Shown here in pieces: positions 2,382 to 17,756 of a DNA stretch of 64,000 nucleotides. A program made the position numbers and the translations under genes. The first letter of the stretch is position 1; the number at the start of each line of letters is the position of its first letter. The DNA lies in IMG/VR virus record IMGVR_UViG_3300029258_003221, positions 62,001-126,000 of that record; one strand, 5' to 3'. Under the pieces are notes generated by a model. That model was given only the letters and a program-made list of their open reading frames with translations. It searched no databases and had not been told where the DNA came from.

Positions 2382-3437
2382 ATGGCGGTCGATTATGACT
2401 CGTTTTTAAATTGGGCGACTGATCGCTTTGGGGAATCAAACATCAAATTCCGCAAAGGGGGACGAGAAATTTGCACCCACAGTTTCTTTGTAGACGGTCA
2501 TCCTGATTTTCCTGATGGTGATCACAAATTTAAACTCTGGATGAATCCAGACGGTGGGAAAAACGAGCTTGAAGGAGGAGCTTACCGTTGTTGGTATACA
2601 GATCATATGGGATCATTGATTTCCCTTGTCAGCATTGTTGATAAAGTTCCATATGATGTTGCGGCAGATATTATCTGTGACGAAATTCCCCTTCGAGCTT
2701 TGGAAAAAAAAGTTCATGATTTTTACAGCGTCAAACAAGATGATCCTCAAGAAACCATAGAAGAAATTAAACAAGAGCTGGAATTCCCACCAGACACATA
2801 TAAAATCGAAGAAGTTCGAGGTCATTGGATGGGAGCACGTGCGTTAGAATATCTTGCCAGTCGAAAAATTCCATCTCAGGGATTTTATGTTTGTATTGAC
2901 GGTGATTACAGAAATCGCCTTGTCATTCCATATTACAACAAAGCAGGTGAATTGTTTTATTACAATTGCCGAACATTAGATAAGAACCCAAAAACCTTGA
3001 GGTATATGAAGCCACCTCCTGAAGATGCAGATCAGGAAAATGTTCTTTATTTCCCTGAATGGCCTGCGGCAGGAAGCAAAATTTATATCACAGAAGGTGA
3101 ATTTGATGCTTTCACTTTATGGTTGTCTGGCTTTTATGGCGTTGCCTGTGGCGGAAAATTTCTTTCATCATCACAAATTGAAATGATTCGTGATTACAAA
3201 GTAGTTTTAGCATTTGATAGCGATGATGCAGGTGAACAGGCTTTGTTGAATATTGGTGAAACTTTGTTGGCTGATGGCTTTCAGGACATGCAGTATGTTA
3301 GACCACCTAAAGTTTTCAAAGACTGGAATAAGCTTTTAGAGCAAAGAAATATCGATACCCTAAAAGCTTATATCCAGCGTTTTGAAAAACCGTACAATAG
3401 TTGGACGGTCAATTCGTTGACTGCCAAAAGGCTTTAG
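2382..3437 (+). CDS. DNA primase (TOPRIM; DnaG/T4 gp61-like)
   Basis: YRNRLVIP, YITEGEFDA, FDSDDAG and KDWN motifs; GAGGA RBS before ATG2382. Confidence 0.9.
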   Translation: MAVDYDSFLNWATDRFGESNIKFRKGGREICTHSFFVDGHPDFPDGDHKFKLWMNPDGGKNELEGGAYRCWYTDHMGSLISLVSIVDKVPYDVAADIICDEIPLRALEKKVHDFYSVKQDDPQETIEEIKQELEFPPDTYKIEEVRGHWMGARALEYLASRKIPSQGFYVCIDGDYRNRLVIPYYNKAGELFYYNCRTLDKNPKTLRYMKPPPEDADQENVLYFPEWPAAGSKIYITEGEFDAFTLWLSGFYGVACGGKFLSSSQIEMIRDYKVVLAFDSDDAGEQALLNIGETLLADGFQDMQYVRPPKVFKDWNKLLEQRNIDTLKAYIQRFEKPYNSWTVNSLTAKRL

Positions 3438-3547
3438 CAAGTGCAGTTGTCGCACGAGCATCCATCACAGTGACAATCGACACAGCTACAAACTGTACAG
3501 TCGCCCGAAGTACAGCCTTCGCATTTACAAGTACATTCGTTATTCAT
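3434..3547 (-). CDS. metallothionein-like 37-aa peptide MNNECTCKCEGCTSGDCTVCSCVDCHCDGCSCDNCTC
   Basis: 13 Cys in 37 aa in CxC/CxxC pattern, no Phe/Tyr/Trp; AAGGAG RBS (3554-3559) and ACTAAATA (3566-3573) upstream; below the ORF-track cutoff. Confidence 0.85.
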   Translation of the reverse strand: MNNECTCKCEGCTSGDCTVCSCVDCHCDGCSCDNCTC

Positions 3548-3590
3548 GGGAATCTCCTTTAATCATATTTAGTCTTTACTCTGGTATATT

Positions 3591-4085
3591 ATGCATTCAA
3601 AAACAATAGAACAACTTCAATATTTTGTGGGAAAAGTTTGTACTGTTCTCACCTCACCTGTAAACCGTGAATTTGATGAGCTAAGAGCACGGGAGCATTT
3701 TGTGCTTCGTGTTGGGGCAATTAACCTTGATGGAATCTGGGGAACTCATCCCGGAAGTGGGATGACCAGCTTTTTTCAATGGTCGCCCAGTTTAATTGGG
3801 ATATGTGAAGAAATTGAGCTTGATCCAAATAATCCAGAACATGCTCAAATGATTGAACAATATGAGAAACAAACTGGACAGAAGATCAAAAGCGACATTT
3901 CTTCCCCGGTACCAACTAAGAAAAAAGAAAAAGATTTGGTGCAGCTAAAAGAGCCACCAAAAAAACAAACGGCACCTGATGAACAAGTGCCGTTTGTTGA
4001 CATTTCAAATTTAGAAAAGCTCGCTGCTCAAACTAAAATGCAATATGATCAATATGATTCAGTCAGAGATAAGCTTTCCCCTTAA
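3591..4085 (+). CDS. hypothetical protein
   Basis: 164-aa ORF filling the gap between neighbouring genes. Confidence 0.65.
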   Translation: MHSKTIEQLQYFVGKVCTVLTSPVNREFDELRAREHFVLRVGAINLDGIWGTHPGSGMTSFFQWSPSLIGICEEIELDPNNPEHAQMIEQYEKQTGQKIKSDISSPVPTKKKEKDLVQLKEPPKKQTAPDEQVPFVDISNLEKLAAQTKMQYDQYDSVRDKLSP

Positions 4086-6131
4086 ATCTTTCACTCTTTC
4101 TCCTATTGATTGCGTCCTTCTTCTGACTCGGTCACCTAAAGGGCTACTTGAAGATTGGGGCATTTGAGGAATTGATGATTGCGTTCCACCAACTTCTGAA
4201 GAAGTTTCTGGATCAGTTTCTGATCCGGTTTTTAGTTCTTCAATTTTCTTATCCACTTTGTCATTGATGGCCATTCTTGCTTCGGCATTTTCAAATTCAT
4301 CATATGATTCTTCTTCTAGGTCTTGTATTGCCATTAGAATTTCAAGTTCGAATTCAGGGTCCATTTCGACTCCAGCTTGTTCGAATTCTTCCATTGCACC
4401 TTTGAAGAGATCATGATTTTTGTATTTGCCCCATGGGGTATCATCTTCTTCAGGAGTTTCTTCAGGAACATCTTCTACAGGTTCATTTTCAGAACTTTCT
4501 GAATCTTGAGGCGTAGGCACGCTTTCAGTATCTCCTAAATCTTCAGAAGCTTTCTTTTGTTTTTGTGCTTCTTTTTCCTGATTCATCCTGTCAATTTGTT
4601 TTTCTAAATCGCTTTTTTCAGGCTCTTGTTCATTTGAATCTTCTGGAGCATTTACATTTGTAGTGTTTGCTACTTCTTCGCCTTTATCTTCACCTTTATC
4701 GATAGCTTGTTTTACTGCGACTTCTTCTGGCGTCTTTGCTTTTACATAAGGAATTTTAAACCCATACATTCCAGACACATGACCAAGTAAGCTTAATGCC
4801 CTTGCCTTGGCAGTTCCATTTGGCTCCCATCTCAGTTTATTTCTAGCCGCTTCATGATTTTCAAGTCCATAATGAGCAACTATTGCATCAAGAACAGCAT
4901 TGGTTACTTTGACCCAAGAGGTATTTGTTCCTGCAATAAAACCAGCGGCCCCTTGTTGGAATCTAGGATCATTTGGTGCTATTTTAGCACCAAATTGTTG
5001 AAGTATTTTGTCTACTGCTTGTTTGCTGGTTTTGCCTACAACATGCGGAGACCAATCATCATCGATATCACTTCCAGCCAAAGGTTCTTGAGGCAAATCA
5101 CCTTGTCCATCGCCTTCAATAGGTTCTTCCTCAGCAGCAACATTTATTTTGCTGGGCATAACAGTAGCTCCGGCACTGTCAATAGGTGGATCAACAGGTG
5201 AATCAGGGGAACCTTCAGGCGAAACAGGTGCTGGTGAATCAGGTGTTCCTTCTGGTGAAACAGGTGCTGGTGCATTTGGTGCAGAAGGTGTTGGTGTTGG
5301 TGAGCCAATACCGGCAACAAGCTTTGGCAGTTTTTTATTGACATAGGCAATGAGTGCTTTTTTGACCTTTTCAATTTCACCAACAATGCTGTTGTTTCTT
5401 TCTAACAGAACTTCATTGACGCTTTCCATTGTAGGATCGTCATGAATCAACCTTCTTGCACCACGAGCAATACCTTTGCCAATATTTTTAGCAGAAGCTA
5501 TTGGGTGAGTGAAAAGTTGCTTCCAAAAACTCTTTGCTGGAGTTGACCCTTTGCCAGTAGGACCACCCATTGGTGCAGGGCCTGTAGGCGCAGGGCTACC
5601 AGAGGGAGCTGATCCTCCAGAGGAGGTTGGTCCACCGCCCGTTGGTGCAGGACCAGATGGAGCTGACCCGCCACCCATTGGACTACCTCCAGAAGGTGCT
5701 GGGCCACTGCCCATTGGTCCACCAGATGGTGGAGCACCATAATTTCCCATAGCACTGGAAACTTTTTTGGCAAGATCGTCCATGTATTTTGCAATACGTC
5801 TGTTAAGCTTTTCTCCCCATTTATCGACTTTTGGATTACCTGTTCCGGCAGGAGCAGCATCTTCAAGAAGTGCAATAATGCCTGATCTATGTTCGTCTAT
5901 GATTGAGTAAACCAGATTCTTACATTCACTTTGCTCTTCTGCTAGAAACTTTTCCAAATAAAAATCAGGCAATTTATGTTCTGAAAGAATTGTATTTGGC
6001 AATCTTGTGTTTTCATAGATTTTCAACTTGAGCAAATCCAGATGCATATTAATAGCATCTTCTATACTTACGTTGTTTTGAACTATACTTTCAGAAAGTG
6101 TTTTTTGTCGATATTCAGATAAGCTTAACAT
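4059..6131 (-). CDS. Pro/Gly-rich, acidic low-complexity protein, possibly head core/internal protein
   Basis: GGxAPSG and PAPVSPEG repeats; many LxE-type sites; CATAAATA at 6157-6164. Confidence 0.6.
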   Translation of the reverse strand: MLSLSEYRQKTLSESIVQNNVSIEDAINMHLDLLKLKIYENTRLPNTILSEHKLPDFYLEKFLAEEQSECKNLVYSIIDEHRSGIIALLEDAAPAGTGNPKVDKWGEKLNRRIAKYMDDLAKKVSSAMGNYGAPPSGGPMGSGPAPSGGSPMGGGSAPSGPAPTGGGPTSSGGSAPSGSPAPTGPAPMGGPTGKGSTPAKSFWKQLFTHPIASAKNIGKGIARGARRLIHDDPTMESVNEVLLERNNSIVGEIEKVKKALIAYVNKKLPKLVAGIGSPTPTPSAPNAPAPVSPEGTPDSPAPVSPEGSPDSPVDPPIDSAGATVMPSKINVAAEEEPIEGDGQGDLPQEPLAGSDIDDDWSPHVVGKTSKQAVDKILQQFGAKIAPNDPRFQQGAAGFIAGTNTSWVKVTNAVLDAIVAHYGLENHEAARNKLRWEPNGTAKARALSLLGHVSGMYGFKIPYVKAKTPEEVAVKQAIDKGEDKGEEVANTTNVNAPEDSNEQEPEKSDLEKQIDRMNQEKEAQKQKKASEDLGDTESVPTPQDSESSENEPVEDVPEETPEEDDTPWGKYKNHDLFKGAMEEFEQAGVEMDPEFELEILMAIQDLEEESYDEFENAEARMAINDKVDKKIEELKTGSETDPETSSEVGGTQSSIPQMPQSSSSPLGDRVRRRTQSIGERVKDLRGKLISD

Positions 6132-6171
6132 GTGTTTCCATTCCCCTTTGGGTTTCTATTTATGTCTTTCA

Positions 6172-6654
6172 TTAAGACTTGGGAGGCATATACTCTCCGA
6201 TTTTCTTCAATGCCATTAAATTTGAATCATAAGATTGAAACTGACTAGGCAAGTATTGATATGAAAGCCTGTCAAAAACCTCAGATTTATCCTCTGGCAC
6301 ATCAAAATAAACATGCCTTCCTCTTTTGCCAATTACTTTCAACCCTATGGCGTTTGGTCGATATTCGTGCATGAGAAGATAAGCAGCCACACCAAGATCA
6401 GAAACAACTTTGTTGTTCTCATTTTCTGGTGGTTCACATTCATTGATTTTCTTCAAAAACATCAAGCAGGAATCAAAGGTATAGAATTCATTAGGTGGCT
6501 GGTACTCCAGCACCAAATTGTCAAATTCTACCATTTCTTCTTCACTTGAGCATTCAAAGTAAATCGATCTGCCTTTTTTCCCTATAACGACATATCCATG
6601 CATAAGGATGTACGCTGCCACCCCTAAATCATTCACGAATTTATGTCTTGCCAT
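6172..6654 (-). CDS. protein with two tandem DUF5659-like (putative winged-helix) domains
   Basis: Internal duplication VxDLGVAAYxLMH...VIGKxGRxxYF...FxxxDSxLMxLKKI. Confidence 0.6.
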   Translation of the reverse strand: MARHKFVNDLGVAAYILMHGYVVIGKKGRSIYFECSSEEEMVEFDNLVLEYQPPNEFYTFDSCLMFLKKINECEPPENENNKVVSDLGVAAYLLMHEYRPNAIGLKVIGKRGRHVYFDVPEDKSEVFDRLSYQYLPSQFQSYDSNLMALKKIGEYMPPKS

Positions 6655-6675
6655 TCTTTCCCCTCTTTCTTCTAT

Positions 6676-8802
6676 TCATTCTATTGGCTGACAGTTTTCA
6701 GCAGCAATCAAACAACCTTTTGCCACTGAATAAACTGGATCTTTAGGTCTGATGACACTGCCGATTTCAATTGGAAGATCAGCGTTTTTGAGAACATCTC
6801 TAAACATATCATCAAAACCCGGAGGACTTGATGTGCCACCAGCAACAACAATGTCAACTGGATGATCAAGTCTGGCTTTTTTCTCATGTTCAATTAAACC
6901 CTGTTTGATTCCAGCAACAGTCTTTTGAATCATGAGTTCGTATTGTGTTTTAATTGCTCTTTCGACAAGAGAAACAGGCTCTTTCGATAAATCAATTTTT
7001 GTTTTTTCTTTGTTAATGAAGGCAATTGTTTCACCAGTTGCCTTAGCAGATTGTTTATCAATCCAGTCGCCACTGTTGACAATGGCAAAGGTAAAGACTT
7101 CTGCACCATAAAGTCCGAACGCAACATTAACCATTCCTGCTCCGCAGTTGTGAATAGTCAGTTGTGGACCAGAGAAAGAATGATCTCCCGGAACTTGTAA
7201 ATCGTAAACTTTACCCTCGTATTCTTCGTGTTCAATTGCTTGAACTCTACCGCAGCAAAATCCGTCTTCAAGGAAAATTGATTCTTTGAAACAACCGTTG
7301 TCGCAATTTGTTTCATTCATATTTTGGACAAGTGAAGAACAAATTTTCTTACCAGCAACACTGACCGTCCACTCCATCTTTTTTCCAAAAATGATCCTAT
7401 TTTCTTGTTTAAGAATATGTTCTCTAGGTTCTCTCCAACCGACACTAGATGCAAAACCAATTCTGGAAAATAATTGTTTAGCCAGAAGTATGAGCTTTGT
7501 GTTTGTGTTTCCGAATACGATTTGATCTTCGGAGATCGTTCCATCCGCTCGAACCATTCCACACAGAAGGTTGAAGCATTCTGAGTTTGTCAATCTGTCG
7601 ATTGTCCATGGGTAATGCTTTTCTCCGCTGTCATCGTAACAGTGGTTTTTCATCCAGTTAACCAAGCCTTGACTGTAACACTTCAATCTTGTGACAGACT
7701 CTCCCTTGCTTGTTTCTGTGGAGTTTTTACCAAATCGTTTCGATAAGATTTCTTTGGCATCCTGCACGTAATCTGTTTCGTGTGCTCCAAAGTCAATTTG
7801 AATACAACCTTCTTTTTCACTGATACTTCCATCTCCCATAAAGTATCCCATGAATCTTTGTAGATTTGGCGTAGATTCAATTCTTTTCTTGTTCCATTTC
7901 TTAGAACAAGTTGTTCTTTCGCAGAGATTGATTGAAGGTCTTGTGGCGTTTCTATTTTGCCCAATAATTGGTTCACCAACTATATCTCCAATTTCTATTT
8001 CTTCACAACCAACCCAATTCCATTTCCCGTTTCTTTTGACATACAATTCATGATTATCCACAAATTTGTACTCTTCTGTGTTGTTTGAATAACCTGCGAT
8101 TTGAATTTTTGTCATAATTCCATCAAAAGGCTTGACTATGACTTTGTTAATTTCACTCCATCGACCTTTGTGTGTAATAACCTTATCGCCTTCCTTGACT
8201 TTTTCAATTTCAACAATGCCTTTATCAGTGTATATTTTAGTGCCCGGACATAAACATGAAATGCCGATGCCCGTAAACATCTTTTCTGATAATTCAGAAT
8301 AAACCAGAGCCATTCCTTCATTCAAAGGACGTGCATCTAGTGTCAGCCCTTCTGGTGATTTGTAGGCTTTGAATACAGCTTCAAGAACCTTTGAGTGATA
8401 ATCTGCATCTGTTTCAGCATTGATGGCATTTGCCGGAACGCTGTAGTAGACAAGTTCTTTATCGTTTGTGACATTATCTAACAAACTGTGCATCATGATG
8501 CTCATGATTTGAAAAGCATCGCTTTCGGCTGGGTTAACACAACCGTCTTTCATTGGGCGACTTAGTTCAAGCTGAGTCATTGTGTAAGCCATGTTTATGG
8601 CAGCTTCACCCAATGCATAAGCAGTATTTGCATCTTCTCGTTGAATCAGCGGCACGCCAGCCTTTTTCATCATATTAAAGACAAATGGATTGTCTAATGA
8701 AAACTTCAAAAAGGCATTGACTTCTTTTTTGAAGACAAGATCTTTTTCGTCATTCCTTTTGCAGCTAATCAAATTGTATGTTCCACAATCAAACCCTATC
8801 AA
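6676..8802 (-). CDS. actin-fold ATPase (volactin-like) interrupted by an intein
   Basis: Phosphate-1 GFDCGTYN, connect NEGMALVYSEL, phosphate-2 GIS|CGAG, adenosine VAGGTS, connect-2 YSVAKG; spliced length 338 aa. Confidence 0.88.
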   Translation of the reverse strand: MIGFDCGTYNLISCKRNDEKDLVFKKEVNAFLKFSLDNPFVFNMMKKAGVPLIQREDANTAYALGEAAINMAYTMTQLELSRPMKDGCVNPAESDAFQIMSIMMHSLLDNVTNDKELVYYSVPANAINAETDADYHSKVLEAVFKAYKSPEGLTLDARPLNEGMALVYSELSEKMFTGIGISCLCPGTKIYTDKGIVEIEKVKEGDKVITHKGRWSEINKVIVKPFDGIMTKIQIAGYSNNTEEYKFVDNHELYVKRNGKWNWVGCEEIEIGDIVGEPIIGQNRNATRPSINLCERTTCSKKWNKKRIESTPNLQRFMGYFMGDGSISEKEGCIQIDFGAHETDYVQDAKEILSKRFGKNSTETSKGESVTRLKCYSQGLVNWMKNHCYDDSGEKHYPWTIDRLTNSECFNLLCGMVRADGTISEDQIVFGNTNTKLILLAKQLFSRIGFASSVGWREPREHILKQENRIIFGKKMEWTVSVAGKKICSSLVQNMNETNCDNGCFKESIFLEDGFCCGRVQAIEHEEYEGKVYDLQVPGDHSFSGPQLTIHNCGAGMVNVAFGLYGAEVFTFAIVNSGDWIDKQSAKATGETIAFINKEKTKIDLSKEPVSLVERAIKTQYELMIQKTVAGIKQGLIEHEKKARLDHPVDIVVAGGTSSPPGFDDMFRDVLKNADLPIEIGSVIRPKDPVYSVAKGCLIAAENCQPIE
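7147..8256 (-). mobile_element. 370-aa intein with LAGLIDADG homing endonuclease
   Basis: N-terminus CLCPGT, block B VDNHEL, YFMGDGS and GMVRADGT motifs, VYDLQV...IHN followed by +1 Cys. Confidence 0.95.
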
Positions 8803-9044
8803 TTTTCCTCCTTAACCTCTTTGCCAAAGTTCAAAGTTCCACCTGATATGAAATTAGGAATAATTGGTTTTACCTCTTCATCATCAAGAAATGAGGTCTT
8901 TTTCGTTTCTTTTTGAGTTGTTTCAGCAGAAGCGACAACAAGACCGTCAGCATTGACATTAATTGTAATATCAAGTGAAATTTCTATTTCTCCCTCTTTT
9001 GGGACCACTTTGATCTTTGTGGCTGGTGTATATCTTTGAACCAT
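8799..9044 (-). CDS. small hypothetical protein translationally coupled to the actin gene
   Basis: Stop overlaps the actin start; ACTAAATA (9053-9060) lies 8 nt upstream of ATG9044. Confidence 0.65.
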   Translation of the reverse strand: MVQRYTPATKIKVVPKEGEIEISLDITINVNADGLVVASAETTQKETKKTSFLDDEEVKPIIPNFISGGTLNFGKEVKEEN

Positions 9045-9051
9045 AGTGTAG

Positions 9052-10047
9052 TTATTTAGTTGTATCAGGCCATCTTTCAAACATTTTGTCTACTTGAGTT
9101 AATATCATTTCGCTTGTAATTTCTGTCAGACAGGGTTTTGGGTTCTTTTTCGTCTTAGGGCAATTTCCCCAACTGTAACATGGCCCACACGTCCACGTAG
9201 GATCATCATCTCTGTGTCTTTGAACAAGGAAGAAATCATACCACTCCCCATATTTTTTTCCGTCAGCGAAAGTAAAAATTCCTGTAAGCGGCTTGCCCAT
9301 TCCCCCAGAACAGTGAAATGCCGCCGTGTCCACACTGACCACATAATCAGCTTCATGCAACACAGCCATCCATAAACGCAACTGATGTTGAGTTCCCACG
9401 GTAGGAACATTATTTTGCTCAAGAATCTCTATTGGGAAATAATGAAGACCCAAAGCATAGCAGTTTCTCTCATGCAGTCCGTCAATTAGTCCCATCAACT
9501 GATGATCCAGCAGGTTTTTATTAAACATTGCAGAAACCGGGCAAACAACAACGCAAGGCCCTTCTCGATCACGATATTCTTCGATTAATTCTCTCCCTTT
9601 TGCCTTTTCGTCTTCTGTGAGCTTAATGTGCATGTTGTGCCTTGTCAGCTTCATGCCACAGTGTTCAGACCAGATATCACTTCGGTTAGGTGCGGGAAAA
9701 GGAGCAAGTTTCATTTCCATTCTGCCACAAGCAGTGGTTGTATTGTAATGTGCTATATAATTTCTTCGATCAACCTGTGCACAGTCCAGCACTTTATCAA
9801 TAAAAGGGTGATCTTTAACCGCTGGGTGGTACATGGCGGGACAAGCGAAGTGTATTTCACAATCCGGCATTAACAACTTAATGTCCTCAAACATCATTCG
9901 ATGCATAAAAATATCACCAAGGCCACCTACATTTCTTGTGATCAGAATTCTATTTCGCTTTTCATAAAAATCAAATAAGTTTAGTGTTCGTTTGATTTTG
10001 TCTGGCCGACGACGTTCAACACGTTGACTGATTATTTTTCTTGGCAT
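9052..10047 (-). CDS. GT9 (heptosyltransferase-like) glycosyltransferase
   Basis: GGLGDIF, VVSVDTAAFHCSGGMGKP, C-terminal CxPC...C...C. Confidence 0.85.
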   Translation of the reverse strand: MPRKIISQRVERRRPDKIKRTLNLFDFYEKRNRILITRNVGGLGDIFMHRMMFEDIKLLMPDCEIHFACPAMYHPAVKDHPFIDKVLDCAQVDRRNYIAHYNTTTACGRMEMKLAPFPAPNRSDIWSEHCGMKLTRHNMHIKLTEDEKAKGRELIEEYRDREGPCVVVCPVSAMFNKNLLDHQLMGLIDGLHERNCYALGLHYFPIEILEQNNVPTVGTQHQLRLWMAVLHEADYVVSVDTAAFHCSGGMGKPLTGIFTFADGKKYGEWYDFFLVQRHRDDDPTWTCGPCYSWGNCPKTKKNPKPCLTEITSEMILTQVDKMFERWPDTTK

Positions 10048-10067
10048 GCCCTAATAAGAGTGTGTCA

Positions 10068-10109
10068 ATAAAAAAAGCCGCACAAGTTTAACCTTGTACG
10101 GCTTTGTTT
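10068..10109 (-). terminator. intrinsic terminator
   Basis: AAAGCCGCACAAG/CTTGTACGGCTTT stem with a T-tract on the minus strand. Confidence 0.7.
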
Positions 10110-10123
10110 CATTTGAGTTTCTG

Positions 10124-10732
10124 TTAGCTATTGCAGACAGATCGCACGGATGCGATGACAGTTGCGGTTGCTCCAGAACCCTTGAGTCGAATTTGAGTGA
10201 TGCTGAGGTCACCAGAGTTGAACACCTGAGTTTCGCCGTCAGCAAGTGTGAAGACAACATCAGTGTCGCCGTTCAATTCACCTGTTACTGTAGCACCAGA
10301 AGCCTGAATTTGCAGGAACTTAGCTGGGCCACCATGAGTTGTGACGAAGTCAATTGTGTTAGCAGTTGTGTAACCGGCTGCCAAGGTGTAAGAACCACCA
10401 ACAGCAAACGTGTTTTCTTCAGGAATGTCACTGTAGACAGATCCGTCATCAGTTACAGTTTCGATGAATGCGAATTCACGAGCAACCTGTGGGTAAGCGA
10501 ATCGCTTCCAGTAGTTGCAGTCAGTGAATGTAGCACCATCCACCAGAAGGCGGTTGATCTTACCCGGTCCCATAACATAAACCTGACGCTGCTTTGAATA
10601 GTCGCCAGAGTTAGGGTTGTGAGTACCAAACGCTTCACCAAGAGCACCGTATGTGCTGCTTGAATTGGTTGATGGGTCAAGGTCCAACTGTCCCTGATCA
10701 ATGTTGTTGAGATTTACTCTAAATACAGACAT
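10124..10732 (-). CDS. hypothetical beta-rich protein, probably virion-associated
   Basis: GGAG RBS, CATACATA at 10774-10781, own terminator, T/G/A-rich. Confidence 0.6.
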   Translation of the reverse strand: MSVFRVNLNNIDQGQLDLDPSTNSSSTYGALGEAFGTHNPNSGDYSKQRQVYVMGPGKINRLLVDGATFTDCNYWKRFAYPQVAREFAFIETVTDDGSVYSDIPEENTFAVGGSYTLAAGYTTANTIDFVTTHGGPAKFLQIQASGATVTGELNGDTDVVFTLADGETQVFNSGDLSITQIRLKGSGATATVIASVRSVCNS

Positions 10733-10783
10733 AAATTTCTCCAAAATTTTTAGTCGTTAAGGTCCGTCTTTTTTATGTATGCA

Positions 10784-11395
10784 CTAAAGTTTAATTACAT
10801 CAGAGTTTGGGAACATATTGCGGTATAATCGTTCACCAAGTCCTGTAGGTACTAAAGTTGTTTGTATTCCAAGGCTTGCCGCTTCATAAAGTTTAGTGCT
10901 TTCAACTCCCATCACTAAACCTGCATTGTCTATGCTAATATCCACTTCAGGAACATATCCTTTTTCCCTTGCTATTCTTTTGAGGGTTTCAATTTGCTTT
11001 TGCAAAAGTGGTCTAACTGGGTAAACGCTTTCACTGAGAATCACGCATTGTTCTGTGTGATCTTCTTTGTATGGCACAGGGACTGCGTAACTACTGATTT
11101 GACATTCTTTCATTAGTTTTTCTAAGGGATGTTCTTTGCCATCAAATCTAAGTTCTCTAATGTGTGCAAATTCTGTTTTTCTTTTTCTCATTTCAGAAAT
11201 GGGAATAACATTGTCGCAATCTCGTAAATACTCCATGGATTCATCTTTGCAGCCTAAGTAAATGTTTAATCCGGGAAATTTACGTTCCATAAAGGGCCTG
11301 AGTAGTTTCAACTGTATAAGGTGCTCATTTGCGTTGCCAAAATAGCCTATACAGTAATTATTTTTAATGGATGCGTAATGTTCTAAACCAATCAT
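10784..11395 (-). CDS. degenerate GT9-fold-like protein
   Basis: VMGVESTKLYEAASLGIQT resembles the GT9 xSVDTxxxHxA motif. Confidence 0.5.
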   Translation of the reverse strand: MIGLEHYASIKNNYCIGYFGNANEHLIQLKLLRPFMERKFPGLNIYLGCKDESMEYLRDCDNVIPISEMRKRKTEFAHIRELRFDGKEHPLEKLMKECQISSYAVPVPYKEDHTEQCVILSESVYPVRPLLQKQIETLKRIAREKGYVPEVDISIDNAGLVMGVESTKLYEAASLGIQTTLVPTGLGERLYRNMFPNSDVIKL

Positions 11396-11424
11396 AGGCT
11401 AATAGAGAAAGAATAGACTATATT

Positions 11425-11619
11425 ATGACAAGTGAACGGGAAAAAGCAGAGCTTGGAGCAGCGACACTTCAAACTTTTTTAGAGCAATTTGGCAATGATG
11501 CACATGCTCAAATTGTGCTTGAAATTCTGTTCGAGGAGCTAATGAATGAGAAGACTGTATCTATACTTAGCCAGCAGGAGCAAGAAGGGGATCAAGCTGA
11601 TAACGATACTCCAGAGTAA
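11425..11619 (+). CDS. small hypothetical protein
   Basis: ORF directly after ACTATATT; overlaps the next gene. Confidence 0.35.
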   Translation: MTSEREKAELGAATLQTFLEQFGNDAHAQIVLEILFEELMNEKTVSILSQQEQEGDQADNDTPE

Positions 11620-11911
11620 TGAATCTGTTGCCAGATCTTCAATTACAGATTTGAGAACTTTTGATTTACCTCCAGTTTGGCAAAGAGAAATTCAGCAAAT
11701 CATCCATGATAATCGCATGTTATATGAGCCGATTATGGAATCGGCCAATAATTACAATGAACTTCGTGAAAGACTAAAAGTTCGTGGGTATACGAACTTG
11801 CCAATGGGCGCATCCCAAATGATCAATGTGTTGAAATACGGGCGTCCACCCAGTGCCAATGTCAGTAGTGTAAAATCAAGAAAAATAATGCTGCAAAAAA
11901 GAAAGAATTGA
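11546..11911 (+). CDS. basic hypothetical protein
   Basis: GAGGAG RBS; abuts the GT2-GT9 gene. Confidence 0.7.
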   Translation: MRRLYLYLASRSKKGIKLITILQSNESVARSSITDLRTFDLPPVWQREIQQIIHDNRMLYEPIMESANNYNELRERLKVRGYTNLPMGASQMINVLKYGRPPSANVSSVKSRKIMLQKRKN

Positions 11912-13633
11912 ATGGAACAGGTTCTTTATCCAATACCCGGAAAATACAACTTAAATGACCCCGTTGATGTCTCTGTCATCATTCCTTTGTACAACAGCAG
12001 AAATGTCGTTAAAGATCAAATTCTGAGATGGGTCTCAGATTATGATTTGAAAGTTGAGATCATTTATGTTGATGACAAATGCCCCAAGCAATCAAAAAAT
12101 GCTGTCTATGAATCTTGGAACAAGCGACGTGACAAACATCAATATTTAGTCAAACTTGTTTGCTCTCATGTAAACCGAGGCTATGGCGGTGCCAATAATT
12201 TAGGTGCTCATTTTGCTAAAGGCAAGTATTTGATCTTTTTAAATTCAGATACTGTTGTTACGCCAAACTGGATCAAACCTATGATCGATGTTTTGGAAGA
12301 TGAGTCAGTAGGTATTGTAGGTAACTTGCAGCTCAAAGAAGGTGGACAATGGCACGGCACAATTGACAGTGCTGGTTCTGAGTGGTCTTGGGACCATATG
12401 AATTTCATGCACATTGGTCGTCATATTTACTATGGCAAATTGCTCAAGAGACCAATTGACATCAACAAATGTCCTCCAAAAATTCTTCAACTCGAAGAAC
12501 GAGAAATGGTAACTGGTTGTTGCTTTGGAATTAGAAAAGAACTTTATGATTATATTGGAGGATTCAATCTCAATTACCGAGTAGGTTACTGGGAGGACAG
12601 TGAAATCTGTCTAACAGTTCGATCTCTTGGTTACAAGGTTATGTTCCAGCCAAATTCAGTCATCTATCACAAGCTCCACCATTCAGAATCTGGCGGTCAT
12701 GACTTCCATGATTTCAACAAACAATACTTCTTCAACAAATGGGTGGATACCGGCGAGATCGACAAATACGTGGAGGCCAAACGTCAACTCAAACAAACCA
12801 AGGTCTCCAAGATACTTGTTCAAAGAAAAGGAGCTAATGGAGATGTGTTAGTGGCAACATCAATTCTGCCGGGCTTGAGAGAGAAATACCCTGATGCCAA
12901 AATCGATTTTCACACTGTTTGCCCCAAGGTTTTGATAGACAACCCATACATCGATGAAGTCGTATCAAAAACAAAAGCTGATGCGACCTCCTATCACCTG
13001 AGATATAACCTTGATTATGCCTACGAGAGAATGCCTTTGGTTAACATCAGAGAATCTTATGGCATTGAATCAAACATCGAACCACAAGACCCATTCATTG
13101 GTTATTCTGCTGTTGAAGGTTTGCCTGATGATCCTTATGTGGTTATACACGCAGGAAAAACTGCTTGGGTTGGACGTAACTGGAGTGAAGGGGTTGGGTT
13201 CATCCCTTTATCATCTATGATTGAAAAACAACTAGGATACAAAATTGTTTGGGTTGGAGTCGAAGGAGACAATGGCCTTCATGGTCTATATGATTTTCGA
13301 GGGAAGACGACATTTCAACAATTGGCAACAATCATGAAAAATGCTGCTTTGTTTGTTGGAATTGATTCATTCCCATTTCATGTTGCACAAGCTGTGAATA
13401 CACCGGGAGTGACGTTCTTTGGTTCAATCCTTCCCGAAACAAGAATTTACAGAGAGAACATGAATGCAGTTACTGCTGAGAGCTTGAAATGTTTAGGTTG
13501 TCACCACAGAAAAGTAGCACCAGCCACTGTAACAGATGAATGTGAAACAGGAACTTTAGAATGTGAAACTATGGTTACTCTTTCAAAGTTCTACGGAAAG
13601 ATAAAGGAGAAATTATGCAGCCTGAATGTTTAG
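11912..13633 (+). CDS. GT2-GT9 fusion glycosyltransferase
   Basis: VSVIIPLYN, YVDD, FLNSD, YWEDSE (GT2); GANGDVL, FVGIDSFPFHVA (GT9). Confidence 0.9.
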   Translation: MEQVLYPIPGKYNLNDPVDVSVIIPLYNSRNVVKDQILRWVSDYDLKVEIIYVDDKCPKQSKNAVYESWNKRRDKHQYLVKLVCSHVNRGYGGANNLGAHFAKGKYLIFLNSDTVVTPNWIKPMIDVLEDESVGIVGNLQLKEGGQWHGTIDSAGSEWSWDHMNFMHIGRHIYYGKLLKRPIDINKCPPKILQLEEREMVTGCCFGIRKELYDYIGGFNLNYRVGYWEDSEICLTVRSLGYKVMFQPNSVIYHKLHHSESGGHDFHDFNKQYFFNKWVDTGEIDKYVEAKRQLKQTKVSKILVQRKGANGDVLVATSILPGLREKYPDAKIDFHTVCPKVLIDNPYIDEVVSKTKADATSYHLRYNLDYAYERMPLVNIRESYGIESNIEPQDPFIGYSAVEGLPDDPYVVIHAGKTAWVGRNWSEGVGFIPLSSMIEKQLGYKIVWVGVEGDNGLHGLYDFRGKTTFQQLATIMKNAALFVGIDSFPFHVAQAVNTPGVTFFGSILPETRIYRENMNAVTAESLKCLGCHHRKVAPATVTDECETGTLECETMVTLSKFYGKIKEKLCSLNV

Positions 13634-14466
13634 ACAGATTAAGCCATCCAAAGATGGAATATTATAGAGACACCTATCAAGACAGTGAAAGGTGGAATGG
13701 TGATGATTCACTTGATGGTAAAACTGTTATCGTTTATTGCGAACAGGGCTTTGGTGACAATATTCAGTTTGCCCGTTATATCCCAAGGCTAAAAGAAGAA
13801 AATTGCAAAGTAATTTTGCATTGCTCTTCTTTTCTACATCGATTGTTTGAACAGCTTGAAGTAGATCAAATGATTGATCGTGATAACCCACATATTCCCG
13901 ATCACGATTATCACATTCCTTCAATGAGCCTGCCTTTTCATTTTGATAATCCAGAAGTTAATTTCCCTTACATCTCAGTTCCTGATGTCACGGATTTATC
14001 TGATCTGAATTTGCCAGAAGATTGTTTCAAAGTTGGAATCGGATGGGAAGGCAACCCGGAACATTCTAATAATGATGAGCGATGTTGTTGTCTTAGATTT
14101 TTCAAAGAAAAATTCGCTGACTGGCCTCAGATCAAGCCTTTTGTCCTGCAAAAGACAATTCATGACAAAGAATTGATCTATGGTTGTGAAGATATGGAGC
14201 TTTACGGTAGTGAAATTCAAGATTTTTATGATACTGCCAAAATCATAAATGCTATGGATTTGATCATATCTGTAGACACGTCAATTCTTCATTTGGCGGG
14301 AGCTATGAGCAAGAAATCTATTGGTCTTTTGTCGTTTCGATGCGATCCGAGATGGGAAGTCACAGGAATTGATTGGTATCCAAGTGTTATTTTCTACAGA
14401 CAAAAATATGATGGAGATTGGCAATCGGTGTTTGATGCTATTGACCTCAAAATTGCTTTAAATTAG
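13615..14466 (+). CDS. GT9-like glycosyltransferase (domain usually found C-terminal to TPR repeats)
   Basis: EQGFGDNIQFARY, GIGWEGNP, ISVDTSILHLAGA, WYPS..YRQ...GDW. Confidence 0.85.
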   Translation: MQPECLDRLSHPKMEYYRDTYQDSERWNGDDSLDGKTVIVYCEQGFGDNIQFARYIPRLKEENCKVILHCSSFLHRLFEQLEVDQMIDRDNPHIPDHDYHIPSMSLPFHFDNPEVNFPYISVPDVTDLSDLNLPEDCFKVGIGWEGNPEHSNNDERCCCLRFFKEKFADWPQIKPFVLQKTIHDKELIYGCEDMELYGSEIQDFYDTAKIINAMDLIISVDTSILHLAGAMSKKSIGLLSFRCDPRWEVTGIDWYPSVIFYRQKYDGDWQSVFDAIDLKIALN

Positions 14467-14469
14467 AAT
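14441..14469 (+). promoter_or_regulatory. sigma70-type promoter for ALDH
   Basis: TTGACC-17 nt-TAGAAT. Confidence 0.6.
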
Positions 14470-14490
14470 TAAATAAACCTAAGAAAGGAA

Positions 14491-15975
14491 ATGTCCATGT
14501 ATCAAGGTAAACACTTCATTTCAGGACTTTTTAGCCAAGAATCAGCGAATGCATTTGTTCGTGCACAAAATCCAGCGAATAAAGAAGAGTATGGCCTTTT
14601 TCCCAAGGCAGAAAAACATACAGTTGAAAAAGCTGTTAAAGCTGCAAGAGACGCCTTTCCAGAGTGGAGAAAGTTAAGCCGAGTGAAACGTGCCGAACTC
14701 TTTGATACTTTGGCACAATTGGTTAAGAGAGACCACGACATTCTCAAGAGAATGATCTCCGATGAAACTGGTAAGAATCTCAATGAATCTCACGCTGAAG
14801 TTATTGAGGCTTTGCATATGTGCCAAGTAGCTGCGGCGTCGGGTCGCCAGCCATATGGTGAGTGTATCGCATCTGAAATCAGCGAAAAAGACGCTCGTGT
14901 CATTAGAAAGCCTAAAGGGGTTGTTGCTGTCATTTCCCCTTGGAACTTCCCTTTAGCAATTGGGTCATTTTGGTCTTCTGCACCAGCTTTAGTTGAAGGA
15001 AACACTGTTGTTCATAAGCCTTCTGAACTTACCCCAATGATTGCTCAAAAAATGGCAGAACTTTATGATGAAGCAGGTTTTCCTCCGGGTGTGTTCAATC
15101 TTGTGCATGGAGATGGAGAGACTGGCGATCACTTAGTTAGAGCTGATGTAGAAGTCATTCTATTCACGGGAAGTGCAGAAGTAGGTCAATTGATTCGACA
15201 ACATTGTGCAACCACTTGGAATAAAACATGCAGTACAGAATGTGGATCAAAATCTGCTGTTATTGTGTTTGATGATGCAGATCAAGAATTGGCTTTGAAT
15301 GCTTGTCTTGCGAGTGCTTTTAAACTTTCTGGGCAAAGATGTGTATCTGGCAGTAGAATTCTTGTTCAAAGAGGAATTTTGGATACCTTTGCTAAAAAGT
15401 TTGTAGACAAAGTTAGAATAGAAGCAACAACCGGAGCACCAACTGAAAATAATCCTCCGATGTACGGACCATTGATTAGTGCTGAACAAAAAGACAAAGT
15501 TTTGTTTTATAATAAAATGGTTCGAGATGACGAGGATGCTCAGGTTTTGTATGATGGAAATGAAGCTGGCTCACCTGTAGAAGGTCATTTTTTGAGACCA
15601 TTTGTTTTTCAATGTGAATGGGGCGACAAAAGATTTTTCAAAGAAGAAGTATTTGGACCACATGCTGCAATTATCCCATTTGATTCAGTAGATGATGCTA
15701 TTCGTATTTACAATGATACGGATTTTGGTTTGGCATTAGGTATAATCACAAACGATTACAGAATTCACAGGAAATGTGAACAGGAATGTACGACAGGCAT
15801 GCTGTATATTAATGGCTCTTCAATTGGGGCAGAATCTCATTTGCCGTTTTCTTCATGGAAGAAAAGTGGAAATTCAGCAAGTGCTTCAGCAACATGGAAG
15901 GCAGTTACGCACACAACAGCTATTACAACAAATTATGAAAAAGGAATTACCTTTGCTCAAGGAATGACCATGTAG
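14491..15975 (+). CDS. NAD(P)-dependent aldehyde dehydrogenase
   Basis: PWNFP, KPSE, FTGS, catalytic E (TECGSKS), catalytic C (SGQRC), EEVFGP. Confidence 0.95.
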   Translation: MSMYQGKHFISGLFSQESANAFVRAQNPANKEEYGLFPKAEKHTVEKAVKAARDAFPEWRKLSRVKRAELFDTLAQLVKRDHDILKRMISDETGKNLNESHAEVIEALHMCQVAAASGRQPYGECIASEISEKDARVIRKPKGVVAVISPWNFPLAIGSFWSSAPALVEGNTVVHKPSELTPMIAQKMAELYDEAGFPPGVFNLVHGDGETGDHLVRADVEVILFTGSAEVGQLIRQHCATTWNKTCSTECGSKSAVIVFDDADQELALNACLASAFKLSGQRCVSGSRILVQRGILDTFAKKFVDKVRIEATTGAPTENNPPMYGPLISAEQKDKVLFYNKMVRDDEDAQVLYDGNEAGSPVEGHFLRPFVFQCEWGDKRFFKEEVFGPHAAIIPFDSVDDAIRIYNDTDFGLALGIITNDYRIHRKCEQECTTGMLYINGSSIGAESHLPFSSWKKSGNSASASATWKAVTHTTAITTNYEKGITFAQGMTM

Positions 15976-15990
15976 TAACGATAATAAACC

Positions 15991-16378
15991 ATGCCTTACA
16001 AAGACATTGAAAAACGACGTGAATCAGGTCGAAAATCTGCCAAAAAACGTATTACAAAAAATACATCTCTGATCCTAAAAACAGGCAAAAGAAAGCCGAA
16101 TACATTGGCAGAGTATGAATCTGATCCCGCTAAAATAGCAGCAAAATCTATTAGAAGTAAATTAAGTTACCAAAGAAACAAAGAAAAAGTTAGAATTAGA
16201 CAAAAGAATCGTCGTAAAGAACTACTTGATTTCATGCAACGAGTTGCTTTGCATTATGGTTGTCAAAACTGTTGTAGTGTGTAAAAATTGTCACGCAGAT
16301 ATTCATCATGGTGATGTAAAAGTCGATGAATCCATGCTGTGCAATGTATCTGAAAATTTAGAAATTATCAGGGGATGA
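15991..16378 (+). pseudogene. decayed HNH endonuclease (internal deletion plus frameshift)
   Basis: Basic N-terminus ending GCQNC; the +1 frame from 16271 reads VVVCKNCHADIHHG to TGA16378; the central HNH segment is missing. Confidence 0.7.
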
Positions 16379-16901: not shown

Positions 16902-17756
16902 TTACTCCTGTGTATCCTCAAAGAAACTAATGATCTCAGTTTCTTTTTCTATATATTGAGCATTTGAATATTCTGCGCAACTAGAATGGTCAGCAATCTC
17001 AACATCTTCTCTTTGTTTATACCAAAATAGATTTGCATCTATGATTTTTTGGCTCTTCAATTGTTGTGGATAAGTCCACAATCCATTAGGAAGTTTTTCT
17101 GCTGCTGACCTTTCGTTTTCAAAAGAATCATCACAACAAAATAACATTAGTTTCTTGGTTTTAAATTGTGCAGCAATTCCTATCGCTGCACAAATGGGAT
17201 TTCTGTAGTCATCAATGTGATATTTTGCTGAATAAGGTGAGCCGAAATCTTTTTGTTGAGATGGTTCGTAAAAATAAGCCTGACCATGGTAATTGTCTAA
17301 AAACTCAGGGCAAGTTCTAATAGATGACACGCATACAGGGTAGTATCTTGTTAAGGAAGGGAGATATTTGGTGCATTCACTATAAGGATTGTTGACAATG
17401 TACAAATTAATTGGTTTAGGATCTTCTCCTAAATGCAAATTCCATTTCGCTAAAGCTCCATTTGTAGCAATTACCGCTACGTCTTGAGGGATCTTTCGAA
17501 GCATTTTGCTTTTGTTTTCAAAGTCATATCCATCAGAAACAATAATGATTTTGTTGAACCAAATCTCTTCTTCATCTATGTTTTGAAGATTTCTTGATCT
17601 ATTAGAAATTTCATTTTTAAGAAGCTTTTGGTATTCTTTTTCGCTGAACATTTTGTTGATGTCAATATGTGGAACACCCTTGTTGTTGAAGTTACGCACC
17701 CAAATTCCATCAGCGTTGATATACTCGTTTCTGTCTTTGCTTTTCTTAATTCTCAT
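16902..17756 (-). CDS. DUF115/Maf/MptE-like Rossmann-fold protein (putative sugar transferase)
   Basis: IIIVSDGYDF, IATNGAL, AAIGIAAQFKTKKLMLFCCD pattern. Confidence 0.55.
   Translation of the reverse strand: MRIKKSKDRNEYINADGIWVRNFNNKGVPHIDINKMFSEKEYQKLLKNEISNRSRNLQNIDEEEIWFNKIIIVSDGYDFENKSKMLRKIPQDVAVIATNGALAKWNLHLGEDPKPINLYIVNNPYSECTKYLPSLTRYYPVCVSSIRTCPEFLDNYHGQAYFYEPSQQKDFGSPYSAKYHIDDYRNPICAAIGIAAQFKTKKLMLFCCDDSFENERSAAEKLPNGLWTYPQQLKSQKIIDANLFWYKQREDVEIADHSSCAEYSNAQYIEKETEIISFFEDTQE

What the first reader, a model, noticed from the sequence alone, without database searches (positions are those of the whole stretch)
6172..9060. Phage-encoded volactin-type actin in a three-gene late operon
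Seen: after removing the intein, a 338-aa actin fold with RPMKDG, YYSVPANAI, DYH, NEGMALVYSEL, FTGIGISCGAGMVNV, GDWIDKQ, GGTSSPPGF and YSVAKG. From memory these motifs match haloarchaeal volactin better than MreB, ParM or FtsA. It is flanked by a coupled 81-aa gene and a duplicated putative winged-helix protein, under an ACTAAATA motif. Known: jumbo phages usually use the tubulin PhuZ, and phage actins (e.g. AlpC) are rare. Inference: an actin-based positioning or trafficking system (filament plus adaptors), or host-shape manipulation late in infection.
Basis: partly seen in the sequence, partly recalled or inferred. Interest (0 to 1): 0.8.

Follow-up and report, generated by a model that had tools for sequence, protein, structure and literature searches.

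The report
Intein-split actin homologue in huge phage
A large marine phage carries a gene for an actin-like filament protein (the Volactin family), interrupted by a self-splicing mobile intein and always flanked by the same two small partner genes, which suggests that a whole clade of huge phages builds its own actin-type cytoskeleton, though what that cytoskeleton does is still unknown.

Summary
ORF 6676-8802 (-) encodes a 708-aa precursor: a 338-aa actin-fold protein split in its phosphate-2 ATP-binding loop by a 370-aa intein (Hint domain plus LAGLIDADG endonuclease; 7147-8256). A 99%-identical strain in another seawater metagenome lacks exactly these 1110 nt.

The spliced protein matches Pfam Volactin (PF25216) at 203 bits; MreB_Mbl reaches 25 bits, below its cut-off. 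It keeps all 31 conserved family positions. A confident model of a 75%-identical orthologue is closest to the filament-forming MamK, MreB and BeeR.

The window is a tailed phage (baseplate genes). More than 50 related viral contigs carry the gene, some on contigs of 458-693 kb. The small acidic upstream protein is present in 50/51 loci and the downstream protein in 38/38, and both persist at 45% actin identity.

Three details are not supported:
- ACTAAATA is only the end of the upstream gene.
- The downstream protein shows no winged-helix match.
- "Late" is untested, and the transcription unit looks like five genes.

My best reading is a phage-encoded polymerising actin with two dedicated partners that organises the infected cell. 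DNA partition and envelope or shape remodelling remain rivals. I found no paper describing it.

The parts
6676..8802 (-). Precursor ORF, 708 aa, TTG start: Volactin-family actin interrupted by an intein
   Evidence: PF25216 at 203.1 bits in two stretches, plus Hint/LAGLIDADG hits in the middle
8257..8802 (-). N-extein, aa 1-182. Holds the phosphate-1 motif GFDCGT (D5, G7, T8), catalytic-type E162, and ends GIGIS
7147..8256 (-). Intein, 370 aa (precursor aa 183-552). Features: Cys1; His69 in the block-B region (assigned by eye); two LAGLIDADG motifs; block F VYDLQV..GDHSF; terminal HN
   Evidence: Precisely absent from a ~99%-identical strain. Sporadic on the extein tree
6676..7146 (-). C-extein, 156 aa plus stop. 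Holds +1 Cys, the rest of the phosphate-2 loop (CGAGMVN), SGDWID, the adenosine motif AGGTS, and YSVAKGCLIAAE
8799..9044 (-). Small acidic partner, 81 aa from ATG 9044, pI 4.8. Conserved N-terminal segment and C-terminal IPDF-x-SG-x-K-L-x-FGK motif. Its stop overlaps the actin start (TTGA)
   Evidence: HMM finds it in 50 of 51 related loci and in L067 at 45% actin identity. No known relatives; the ESM model is disordered
6172..6654 (-). Downstream partner, 160 aa: tandem duplication of a ~75-aa beta-alpha-beta-beta-alpha-alpha domain, possibly DUF5659-like. Starts 21 nt after the actin stop
   Evidence: (pLDDT 94). Present in 38 of 38 loci. Single-copy in some relatives. No fold match. DUF5659 scores stay below cut-off
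9052..10047 (-). GT9-like glycosyltransferase, 331 aa. First gene of the probable transcription unit and a conserved neighbour
   Evidence: A GT9 gene also lies next to the module in L067 and L066
4059..6131 (-). 690-aa acidic protein with Pro/Gly/Ser-rich low-complexity segments. Conserved neighbour and last gene of the probable unit
10074..10105 (-). Terminator-like hairpin (13-bp stem plus T run) between gene 10124-10744 and the GT9-like gene. Probable upstream boundary of the unit
3964..3998 (-). Terminator-like hairpin (15-bp stem plus T run) downstream of the 690-aa gene. Probable end of the unit

Best explanation
The gene encodes a precursor of a 338-aa actin-fold ATPase of the Volactin family. 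A class-1 intein carrying a LAGLIDADG homing endonuclease sits between Ser182 and Cys183 of the phosphate-2 nucleotide-binding loop. Protein splicing must remove it before the ATP site can form.

The mature protein most likely polymerises, ATP-dependently, into dynamic filaments inside cells infected by a large marine tailed phage. It works together with two dedicated partners:
- A small acidic, probably disordered protein, translationally coupled upstream. Its conserved C-terminal peptide is a candidate filament-binding motif.
- A downstream protein made of one or two copies of a small alpha/beta domain.

The module would act as a phage-encoded cytoskeleton that organises the infection, positioning replicating DNA, assembly sites or capsids, in the way PhuZ, AlpC/AlpA and ParMR do.

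Shown: family membership, intein anatomy and mobility, conserved ATP-site residues, closest folds being filament formers, and conservation of the partners.

Inferred: splicing activity, polymerisation, partner binding and the cellular role.
For: Family and fold:
- PF25216 at 203 bits for the precursor, and 232 bits over the whole profile for an intein-less orthologue. MreB_Mbl stays below its cut-off.
- All 31 invariant or near-invariant columns of a 53-member family alignment are kept.
- AF2 model of a 75%-identical orthologue: pLDDT 94, pTM 0.91.
- Its best PDB matches are MamK filament, MreB and BeeR filament, then eukaryotic actin and ParM.

Intein:
- Splicing residues are intact.
- A precise intein-free allele exists in a ~99%-identical strain.
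- Intein-bearing alleles are scattered on the extein tree.

Module and context:
- Gene order is conserved in more than 50 viral loci. The small partner is present in 50/51 and the domain partner in 38/38. Both persist in L067 at 45% actin identity.
- The small gene and the actin gene overlap by 4 nt.
- The window is a phage: baseplate genes, primase and exonuclease next door.
- H. volcanii volactin forms dynamic filaments in vivo (PMC10869688). The prophage actin AlpC with its adaptor AlpA is needed for efficient phage replication (PMC4446434).
Against: - There is no experimental or transcript evidence; no RNA run holds the locus.
- The phosphate-2 loop reads S-x-G-x-G-x-x-N rather than the D-x-G-G-G-T of MreB or actin. 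ATPase chemistry is therefore assumed from family conservation only.
- Neither partner resembles a known filament adaptor.
- No cargo has been identified.
- The model is of an orthologue, not of the window's own spliced protein.
- The founding member HVO_2015 could not be fetched, so no rooted phylogeny was made.
Confidence: 0.6

Rival explanations
1. ParMRC-type DNA partition. The actin pushes or pulls copies of the phage genome (an episomal or pseudolysogenic state, or replication foci). The downstream tandem-domain protein acts as a ParR/AlpA-like adaptor bound to a centromere-like site.
For: - The order actin then small downstream gene matches parM-parR.
- DNA primase and an exonuclease lie next to the module.
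- Some Volactin-family clusters are fused to HU-type DNA-binding domains. One member has a weak ParB-HTH match.
- AlpC/AlpA is a precedent (PMC4446434).
Against: - No iterated centromere-like repeats occur near the module, and intergenic gaps are only 21-76 nt.
- Both partners are acidic, pI 5.4 and 4.8.
- No RHH, wHTH or other DNA-binding fold match was found.
- No integrase or lysogeny genes were seen in the parts of the window that I scanned.
Confidence: 0.15
2. Envelope or cell-shape remodelling. An MreB-like scaffold organises the phage's glycosyltransferases or redirects host wall or LPS synthesis, for example to enlarge the cell or alter its surface.
For: - The module sits in a cluster of GT9-like and GT2 genes.
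- The GT9 neighbour is conserved in more than 50 loci and recurs beside distant family members L067 and L066.
- Volactin affects the rod-to-disk transition in H. volcanii (PMC10869688).
- One family member is fused to Wzz/GNVR/ParA-like chain-length-determinant domains.
Against: - The protein starts directly at the phosphate-1 strand, with no N-terminal amphipathic helix.
- Adjacency may be plain synteny.
- Some relatives (L032, L046) keep the actin and its downstream partner but have no GT9-like gene in the stretch recovered.
Confidence: 0.2
3. A non-polymerising ASKHA ATPase (chaperone-like, EutJ-like or kinase-like), or a gene inactivated by the insertion.
For: EutJ appears among the structural matches at rank 26. 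The phosphate-2 motif is atypical.
Against: - The top 25 structural matches are all MamK, MreB or BeeR entries, most of them filament or crystal structures.
- Pfam places it in Volactin.
- The frame is open across the intein, with all splicing residues present.
- The intein-bearing form recurs in several lineages.
Confidence: 0.05

Closest known systems
Volactin (VolA, HVO_2015) of Haloferax volcanii; Pfam PF25216
   Same: Same Pfam family, far above the cut-off and over the full profile length. Same actin fold and similar size, about 330-340 aa.
   Different: - Encoded by a bacterial-type tailed phage (Shine-Dalgarno sites), not a haloarchaeal chromosome.
- Carries an intein.
- Has two phage-specific partner genes.
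[quoted passage not shown]
MamK, MreB and BeeR (bacterial filament-forming actins)
   Same: Best structural matches: E about 1e-14 to 1e-15, TM 0.66-0.75.
   Different: - Only 15-19% identity.
- A sequence profile finds no PDB chain at E <= 1.
- MreB_Mbl is below the Pfam cut-off.
- The phosphate-2 motif differs.
AlpC/AlpA of Corynebacterium prophage CGP3
   Same: A phage-borne actin-like protein co-transcribed with a small partner, needed for efficient phage replication (PMC4446434). This is the closest functional precedent.
   Different: No sequence relationship to AlpC or AlpA was detected or tested here. No DNA-binding partner or binding site was found.
ParM/ParR/parC type II plasmid partition
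   Same: An actin-like ATPase followed by a small gene. ParM is among the structural matches (rank 48).
   Different: No centromere repeats, and the partner is acidic with no RHH-like fold match.
PhuZ tubulin spindle of nucleus-forming jumbo phages
   Same: A phage-encoded cytomotive filament in large phages; a possible functional analogue.
   Different: Tubulin fold, not actin. No chimallin or PhuZ gene was seen in the window ORFs that I scanned.

Membership tests
Volactin family (Pfam PF25216) | Sequence match to the family profile above the curated cut-off (35 bits) | tested here: met
   203.1 bits, E 1e-59, for the precursor in two stretches. 231.9 bits over profile positions 1-321 of 321 for the intein-less orthologue L005. 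53 of 53 diverse relatives match.
Volactin family (Pfam PF25216) | Conserved family residues, including the nucleotide-binding motifs | tested here: met
   All 31 invariant or near-invariant columns are kept: D5 G7 T8, E162, S182/G184/G186/N189, G285 G286 T287.
Volactin family (Pfam PF25216) | Dynamic filaments in vivo, as shown for VolA | not testable with these tools
   Needs microscopy or biochemistry. Basis for VolA: PMC10869688.
Volactin family (Pfam PF25216) | Phylogenetic grouping with HVO_2015 rather than with salactin, MamK, MreB or ParM | tested here: inconclusive
   Profile scores favour Volactin: Salactin hits 3 of 53, Actin 3 of 53, MreB_Mbl 25 of 53, all weak. Reference sequences could not be fetched, so no rooted tree was made.
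Filament-forming actin superfamily (MreB/MamK/ParM/actin) | Actin/ASKHA fold, closest to known polymerising members | tested here: met
   AF2 model of the orthologue: pLDDT 94.1, pTM 0.91. Foldseek top 25 are MamK, MreB and BeeR entries.
Intein (class 1, with LAGLIDADG homing endonuclease) | Cys1, block-B His, penultimate His, terminal Asn, +1 Cys; Hint and LAGLIDADG domains; in frame | tested here: met
   The block-B His69 assignment is by eye.
Intein (class 1, with LAGLIDADG homing endonuclease) | Presence/absence polymorphism at an exact site in otherwise near-identical alleles | tested here: met
   The run X6 contig skips exactly 1110 nt at ~99% flank identity. Sporadic on the tree.
Intein (class 1, with LAGLIDADG homing endonuclease) | Protein-splicing activity | not testable with these tools
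   Needs expression of the precursor.
ParMRC-type partition system | Centromere-like iterated repeats next to the operon | tested here: not met
   No such repeats in 3400-12000. The only arrays lie in the coding low-complexity part of the 690-aa gene.
ParMRC-type partition system | Small DNA-binding adaptor (RHH/HTH) encoded with the actin | tested here: inconclusive
   A conserved small partner exists, but it is acidic and has no significant fold match.
DUF5659 (PF18903), for the downstream partner | Profile match above the cut-off (23.6 bits) | tested here: not met
   Best score 18.7 bits (L067 unit), and no hit for the window protein. The Atlas gives only a weak lead.
Winged-helix DNA-binding domain, for the downstream partner | wHTH topology or a structural match | tested here: not met
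   The model topology is b-a-b-b-a-a per repeat. Best PDB match E 0.08 with TM < 0.3. MarR-type hits are only at E 0.3-0.5.

The most novel reading that the evidence does not exclude
The Volactin family is mainly a phage family. A whole clade of huge phages (contigs up to about 690 kb) runs an actin-based cytoskeleton with two previously unknown partner proteins. This system traffics or positions phage DNA or capsids, an actin counterpart of the PhuZ spindle. Haloarchaeal volactin would then be one cellular offshoot of a largely viral radiation.
Probability: 0.25. Interest if true: 0.8.

Novelty: new variant of a known kind. Interest (0 to 1): 0.6.

Why it matters
Phage-built cytoskeletons are so far known mainly from the tubulin PhuZ of nucleus-forming jumbo phages and from a few actin-like proteins of prophages and plasmid-like phages. 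This gene belongs to a large family: 1072 representatives at 50% identity with E <= 0.001, and the nearest Atlas clusters are 92-100% viral. It is carried by uncultivated huge phages from seawater and sediment, always with the same two partners. A 2026 review of jumbo-phage biology does not mention actin homologues.

If the protein polymerises, it would show that large phages outside the nucleus-forming group also organise the host cytoplasm, and it would provide two new candidate filament regulators. The intein in the ATP loop, with a natural intein-free allele for comparison, gives a ready-made on/off pair for experiments.

Tried and rejected
- Megablast of the region against GenBank phages: no match. 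tblastn found only two uncultured huge phages.
- Profile of the phage actins against PDB sequences: no hit at E <= 1, so fold comparison was needed.
- Genome-contig scan with the diverse alignment failed because it had no conserved stretch. With the close alignment it returned only six MAG contigs assigned to six different phyla. Four of them keep the phage module, so they are probably mis-binned phage and not hosts.
- I tried to reach haloarchaeal volactin through an acidic family member (P0268). Its relatives are all unnamed metagenomic proteins on virus-like contigs, so there is no rooted tree against HVO_2015.
- Centromere-like repeats: none.
- Sigma-70-like promoters: not above the shuffled expectation, 16 against 19.3.
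- ACTAAATA as a promoter motif: rejected.
- RNA evidence: only two wastewater metatranscriptomes, each holding 4% of the words. This is not evidence of expression.
- Downstream partner against PDB and BFVD: nothing significant.
- Small partner in the ESM Atlas: nothing.
- PHROGs and Pfam on the two partners and the 690-aa neighbour, and on the two conserved upstream genes 10124-10744 and 10784-11395: no informative hits.
- The window's own spliced protein was not folded or searched as one piece, because only unaltered sequences could be submitted. A natural intein-less orthologue (75% identical) was used instead.
Full report
**1. What is in the sequence**

On the minus strand, 6676-8802 is a single open frame of 708 aa starting at TTG. 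AAGGAGG lies five nt upstream of the start. The start overlaps the stop of the preceding gene by four nt (TTGA).

Pfam splits the protein into three parts:
- Residues 2-182 match Volactin (PF25216). The whole protein scores 203.1 bits, E 1e-59, in two stretches, against a cut-off of 35.
- The middle matches Hint_2, Intein_splicing and LAGLIDADG_3.
- MreB_Mbl reaches only 24.8 bits, below its cut-off of 27.

The insert is aa 183-552, window 7147-8256, 370 aa. It begins Cys-Leu-Cys and ends His-Asn, followed by Cys. It has two LAGLIDADG-type motifs and a block-F-like VYDLQV..GDHSF; I assigned these and the block-B His69 by eye. Removing the insert gives 182 + 156 = 338 aa.

**2. The insert is a mobile intein**

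I laid public metagenome contigs on 4059-10047.
- A sediment-metagenome contig of 42,755 nt is identical to the window and may be its source.
- A 105,651-nt contig from a different study's seawater run carries the same locus with 49 differing letters and two small indels over about 4.9 kb. It skips exactly 1110 nt (7144-8253).

Reading the junctions shows that the short allele encodes ...GIS-C-GAGMV.... This is the precise intein-free gene; the three-nt offset is only the choice between two Cys codons.

Among related viral contigs the intein occupies the same site in L014, L015, L019, L021, L023, L044 and L046, and is absent from the rest. On an extein tree the three complete, parsed intein-bearing alleles need three gains or losses.

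In the wider family, inteins sit at three or more different positions. These are profile positions about 174 (this one), 179 and 197. The Atlas also holds a 57-member viral cluster of LAGLIDADG plus Volactin proteins.

The site lies between Ser182 and Cys183 of the invariant S-x-G-x-G-x-x-N loop. By position this is the phosphate-2 nucleotide-binding loop of the actin fold. The precursor therefore cannot have a complete ATP site before splicing.

**3. The extein is a Volactin-family actin**

- An intein-less orthologue (L005, 254/338 identical to the window's spliced protein) matches PF25216 over the entire profile at 231.9 bits. All 53 members of a diverse alignment match it.
- The window protein keeps all 31 invariant or near-invariant columns of that alignment. 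These include D5-x-G7-T8 (phosphate 1), E162 in PxNE (the position of the catalytic Glu/Gln of MreB/actin, by motif analogy), the phosphate-2 loop and G285-G286-T287 (adenosine motif).
- A sequence profile of the phage proteins finds nothing in the PDB at E <= 1.
- The AlphaFold2 model of the orthologue is confident: pLDDT 94.1, pTM 0.91.
- Its best solved neighbours are the MamK filament (E 2.9e-15, TM 0.72-0.75), many MreB structures and the BeeR filament (TM 0.74). Eukaryotic actins and ParM follow. The first non-filament protein, EutJ, is at rank 26.

This is the pattern of a polymerising actin homologue, not of a sugar kinase or an Hsp70. The model is of an orthologue, because an edited (spliced) sequence could not be submitted.

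**4. It is phage-borne and widespread**

- The window contains baseplate genes (Tail_P2_I, Phage_base_V) and PKD-domain proteins. It also holds a DNA primase, a PD-(D/E)XK exonuclease and a free-standing GIY-YIG endonuclease.
- The window DNA equals IMG/VR contigs of 234,631 and 70,012 bp. It occurs in seawater and sediment metagenomes from six studies.
- tblastn against GenBank phages finds only two uncultured huge phages. These are LR756511.1 (595 kb, 58% identity, same synteny, no intein) and LR745208.1 (485 kb, 29%, different neighbours).
- IMG/VR gives 56 loci.
- The 5.8-billion-protein collection gives 1086 relatives, some on contigs of 458-693 kb.
- The 50%-identity library gives 1072 representatives at E <= 0.001 and 334 at E <= 1e-30.
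- The nearest ESM Atlas clusters are named Volactin-domain proteins and are 92-100% viral.
- Six MAG contigs assigned to six different phyla carry close relatives, four of them with the same module. These are most simply mis-binned phage.
- Most orthologues have AGGAG-type ribosome-binding sites.

**5. The module**

Gene order in almost all related loci is: 203-aa gene, 206-aa gene, GT9-like gene, small protein, actin, (variable insert), domain protein, Pro-rich protein, then a convergent 164-aa gene and the primase.

HMMs built from the partners find the small upstream protein in 50 of 51 loci with enough upstream sequence. They find the downstream domain in 38 of 38 loci. These loci are not all independent. 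Both partners are also found beside a family member only 45% identical (L067), again next to a GT9 gene.

*Small protein.* It is 81 aa from ATG 9044, the start that matches the orthologues, and acidic (pI 4.8). It has a conserved N-terminal segment, a variable linker and a conserved C-terminal IPDF-x-SG-x-K-L-x-FGK peptide. It has no detectable relatives, and the Atlas model is disordered.

*Downstream protein.* It is a tandem duplication; the halves are 47.6% identical, E 1e-22. Some relatives have a single copy of about 75 aa. Its model is confident (pLDDT 94), with a beta-alpha-beta-beta-alpha-alpha topology per repeat. Neither the PDB nor BFVD gives a significant match. DUF5659 is a sub-threshold lead. 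It is acidic overall (pI 5.4). The winged-helix label is therefore not supported.

**6. Transcription and timing**

ACTAAATA at 9053-9060 is the end of the GT9-like gene and is not enriched. Sigma-70-like sites are no more frequent than in shuffles.

Two strong terminator-like hairpins on the minus strand lie at 10105-10074 and 3998-3964. They bracket the GT9-like gene, the small protein, the actin, the domain protein and the 690-aa gene, which suggests a five-gene unit. No RNA data hold the locus. "Late" is therefore untested.

**7. How it most likely works**

Shown:
- A Volactin-family actin with intact family residues.
- Nearest structural neighbours that are cytomotive filaments.
- Two co-inherited partners.
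- An intein that must be spliced out.

Inferred:
- After splicing, the protein polymerises with ATP.
- The small protein's conserved C-terminal peptide and the domain protein bind the filament as regulators or cargo adaptors.
- The system organises the infected cell.

Precedents are volactin's dynamic filaments (PMC10869688), AlpC/AlpA (PMC4446434) and PhuZ.

I rank a general phage-cytoskeleton role first, at 0.6 including the identity claims. Two rivals follow.
- Envelope or shape remodelling, 0.2. It rests on the persistent GT9 neighbourhood and on one family member fused to Wzz/GNVR/ParA-like domains.
- ParMRC-like partition, 0.15. It fits the gene order, the replication-gene neighbours and the HU fusions elsewhere in the family. 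It is weakened by the absence of centromere repeats and by acidic partners with no DNA-binding fold.

**8. Comparison and novelty**

By sequence the protein is a member of the Volactin family. By structure it looks like MamK, MreB and BeeR. By context it resembles AlpC/AlpA or ParMR, but it fails the centromere test and the DNA-binding-adaptor test is inconclusive.

Databases already auto-label such proteins as Volactin-domain proteins. However, I found no paper describing actin homologues in huge or jumbo phages:
- The 17 papers that mention volactin concern haloarchaea or general reviews.
- Searches pairing phage terms with actin terms returned only AlpC and reviews that do not cover this family.
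- A 2026 jumbo-phage review does not mention actin.

I therefore rate it a new variant of a known kind: a phage-specific actin module with new partners and an intein in the ATP loop.

**9. Limits**

- There is no rooted phylogeny against HVO_2015.
- There is no multimer modelling.
- There is no host assignment.
- There are no expression data.

Noticed in passing
L009:9544-11229, L043:9048-10670, L015:7024-8556, L020:9450-10989. Shorter relatives: L001:7077-7766, L012:9072-9749, L025:3822-4769: In several related phages a 510-562-aa gene lies between the actin and its downstream partner. It has a T4-type terminase large-subunit ATPase domain (Terminase_6N, 30.4 bits, cut-off 22). Other loci keep only a 226-316-aa protein that matches a C-terminal stretch of it, and the window has none. 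It could be a decaying TerL paralogue or a hint of a link to DNA packaging.
   Followed up: partly
L017:7237-8001 and L010:7387-7990; window 17753-18718 (-): Free-standing GIY-YIG (+NUMOD3) homing-endonuclease genes are inserted between the small partner gene and the actin gene in some relatives. The window has its own GIY-YIG endonuclease gene elsewhere. Together with the intein, this makes the locus a hotspot for selfish elements.
   Followed up: partly
Proteins P0121-P0270: Volactin-family genes carry inteins at three or more different sites (profile positions about 174, 179 and 197), including a mini-intein-sized insert (P0128, 500 aa). Two representatives (P0131, P0179) are tandem double-actin fusions.
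   Followed up: no
P0242 (1160 aa), P0181 (654 aa); Atlas cluster: Some family members are fused to other domains. These are Wzz/GNVR/ParA-like chain-length-determinant (BY-kinase-type) domains, a weak ParB-type HTH, and, in an Acidobacteriota cluster, an HU-type DNA-binding domain. The fusions point in different functional directions.
   Followed up: no
L028:4694-5149, L040:9094-9552, L056:9009-9464 (orthologues of window 6172-6654): One repeat unit of several orthologues matches positions about 72-138 of Pfam LidA_Long_CC (PF18641) at 30 bits, above its cut-off of 26.5. The window's own protein does not match. I do not know whether this is real homology to part of that profile or a profile artefact.
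   Followed up: partly
window 9052-16000 and 10784-11395: A cluster of glycosylation-type genes surrounds the module. It comprises GT9-like 9052-10047, a GT2+GT9 fusion 11912-13633 (its C-terminal half is paralogous to the 331-aa gene) and GT9-like 13615-14466. An aldehyde dehydrogenase lies at 14491-15975 (423 bits). By eye only, the 203-aa gene 10784-11395 also has a GT-B-like C-terminal motif.
   Followed up: partly
window 4059-6131 (-), especially 5190-5740: The 690-aa neighbour has Pro/Gly/Ser-rich segments encoded by imperfect 36-nt periodic repeats, and a very acidic C-terminal half (pI 4.8). The near-identical strain in run X6 differs by a 6-nt deletion inside the repeats (at 5290) and by a 4-nt insertion in the actin-partner spacer (after 6663).
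   Followed up: no
L059-L064 (genome contigs): Close relatives of the module lie on MAG contigs assigned to six different phyla, one of them a 546-kb contig labelled Bacteriovoracaceae. These are probably huge-phage contigs binned with bacterial genomes.
   Followed up: partly
window 45671-47137 (+), 48473-49258 (+), 53510-54229 (+): The window also encodes a tRNA nucleotidyltransferase-like protein, a HAD domain of the RNA-repair 'Swiss Army Knife' type, and a histidine phosphatase. No tRNA genes were found in the window.
   Followed up: no
window 10124-10744 (-) with hairpin 10074-10105: The conserved 206-aa gene of unknown function is followed by a strong terminator-like hairpin. This suggests a separately terminated, possibly highly expressed transcript just upstream of the actin unit.
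   Followed up: no
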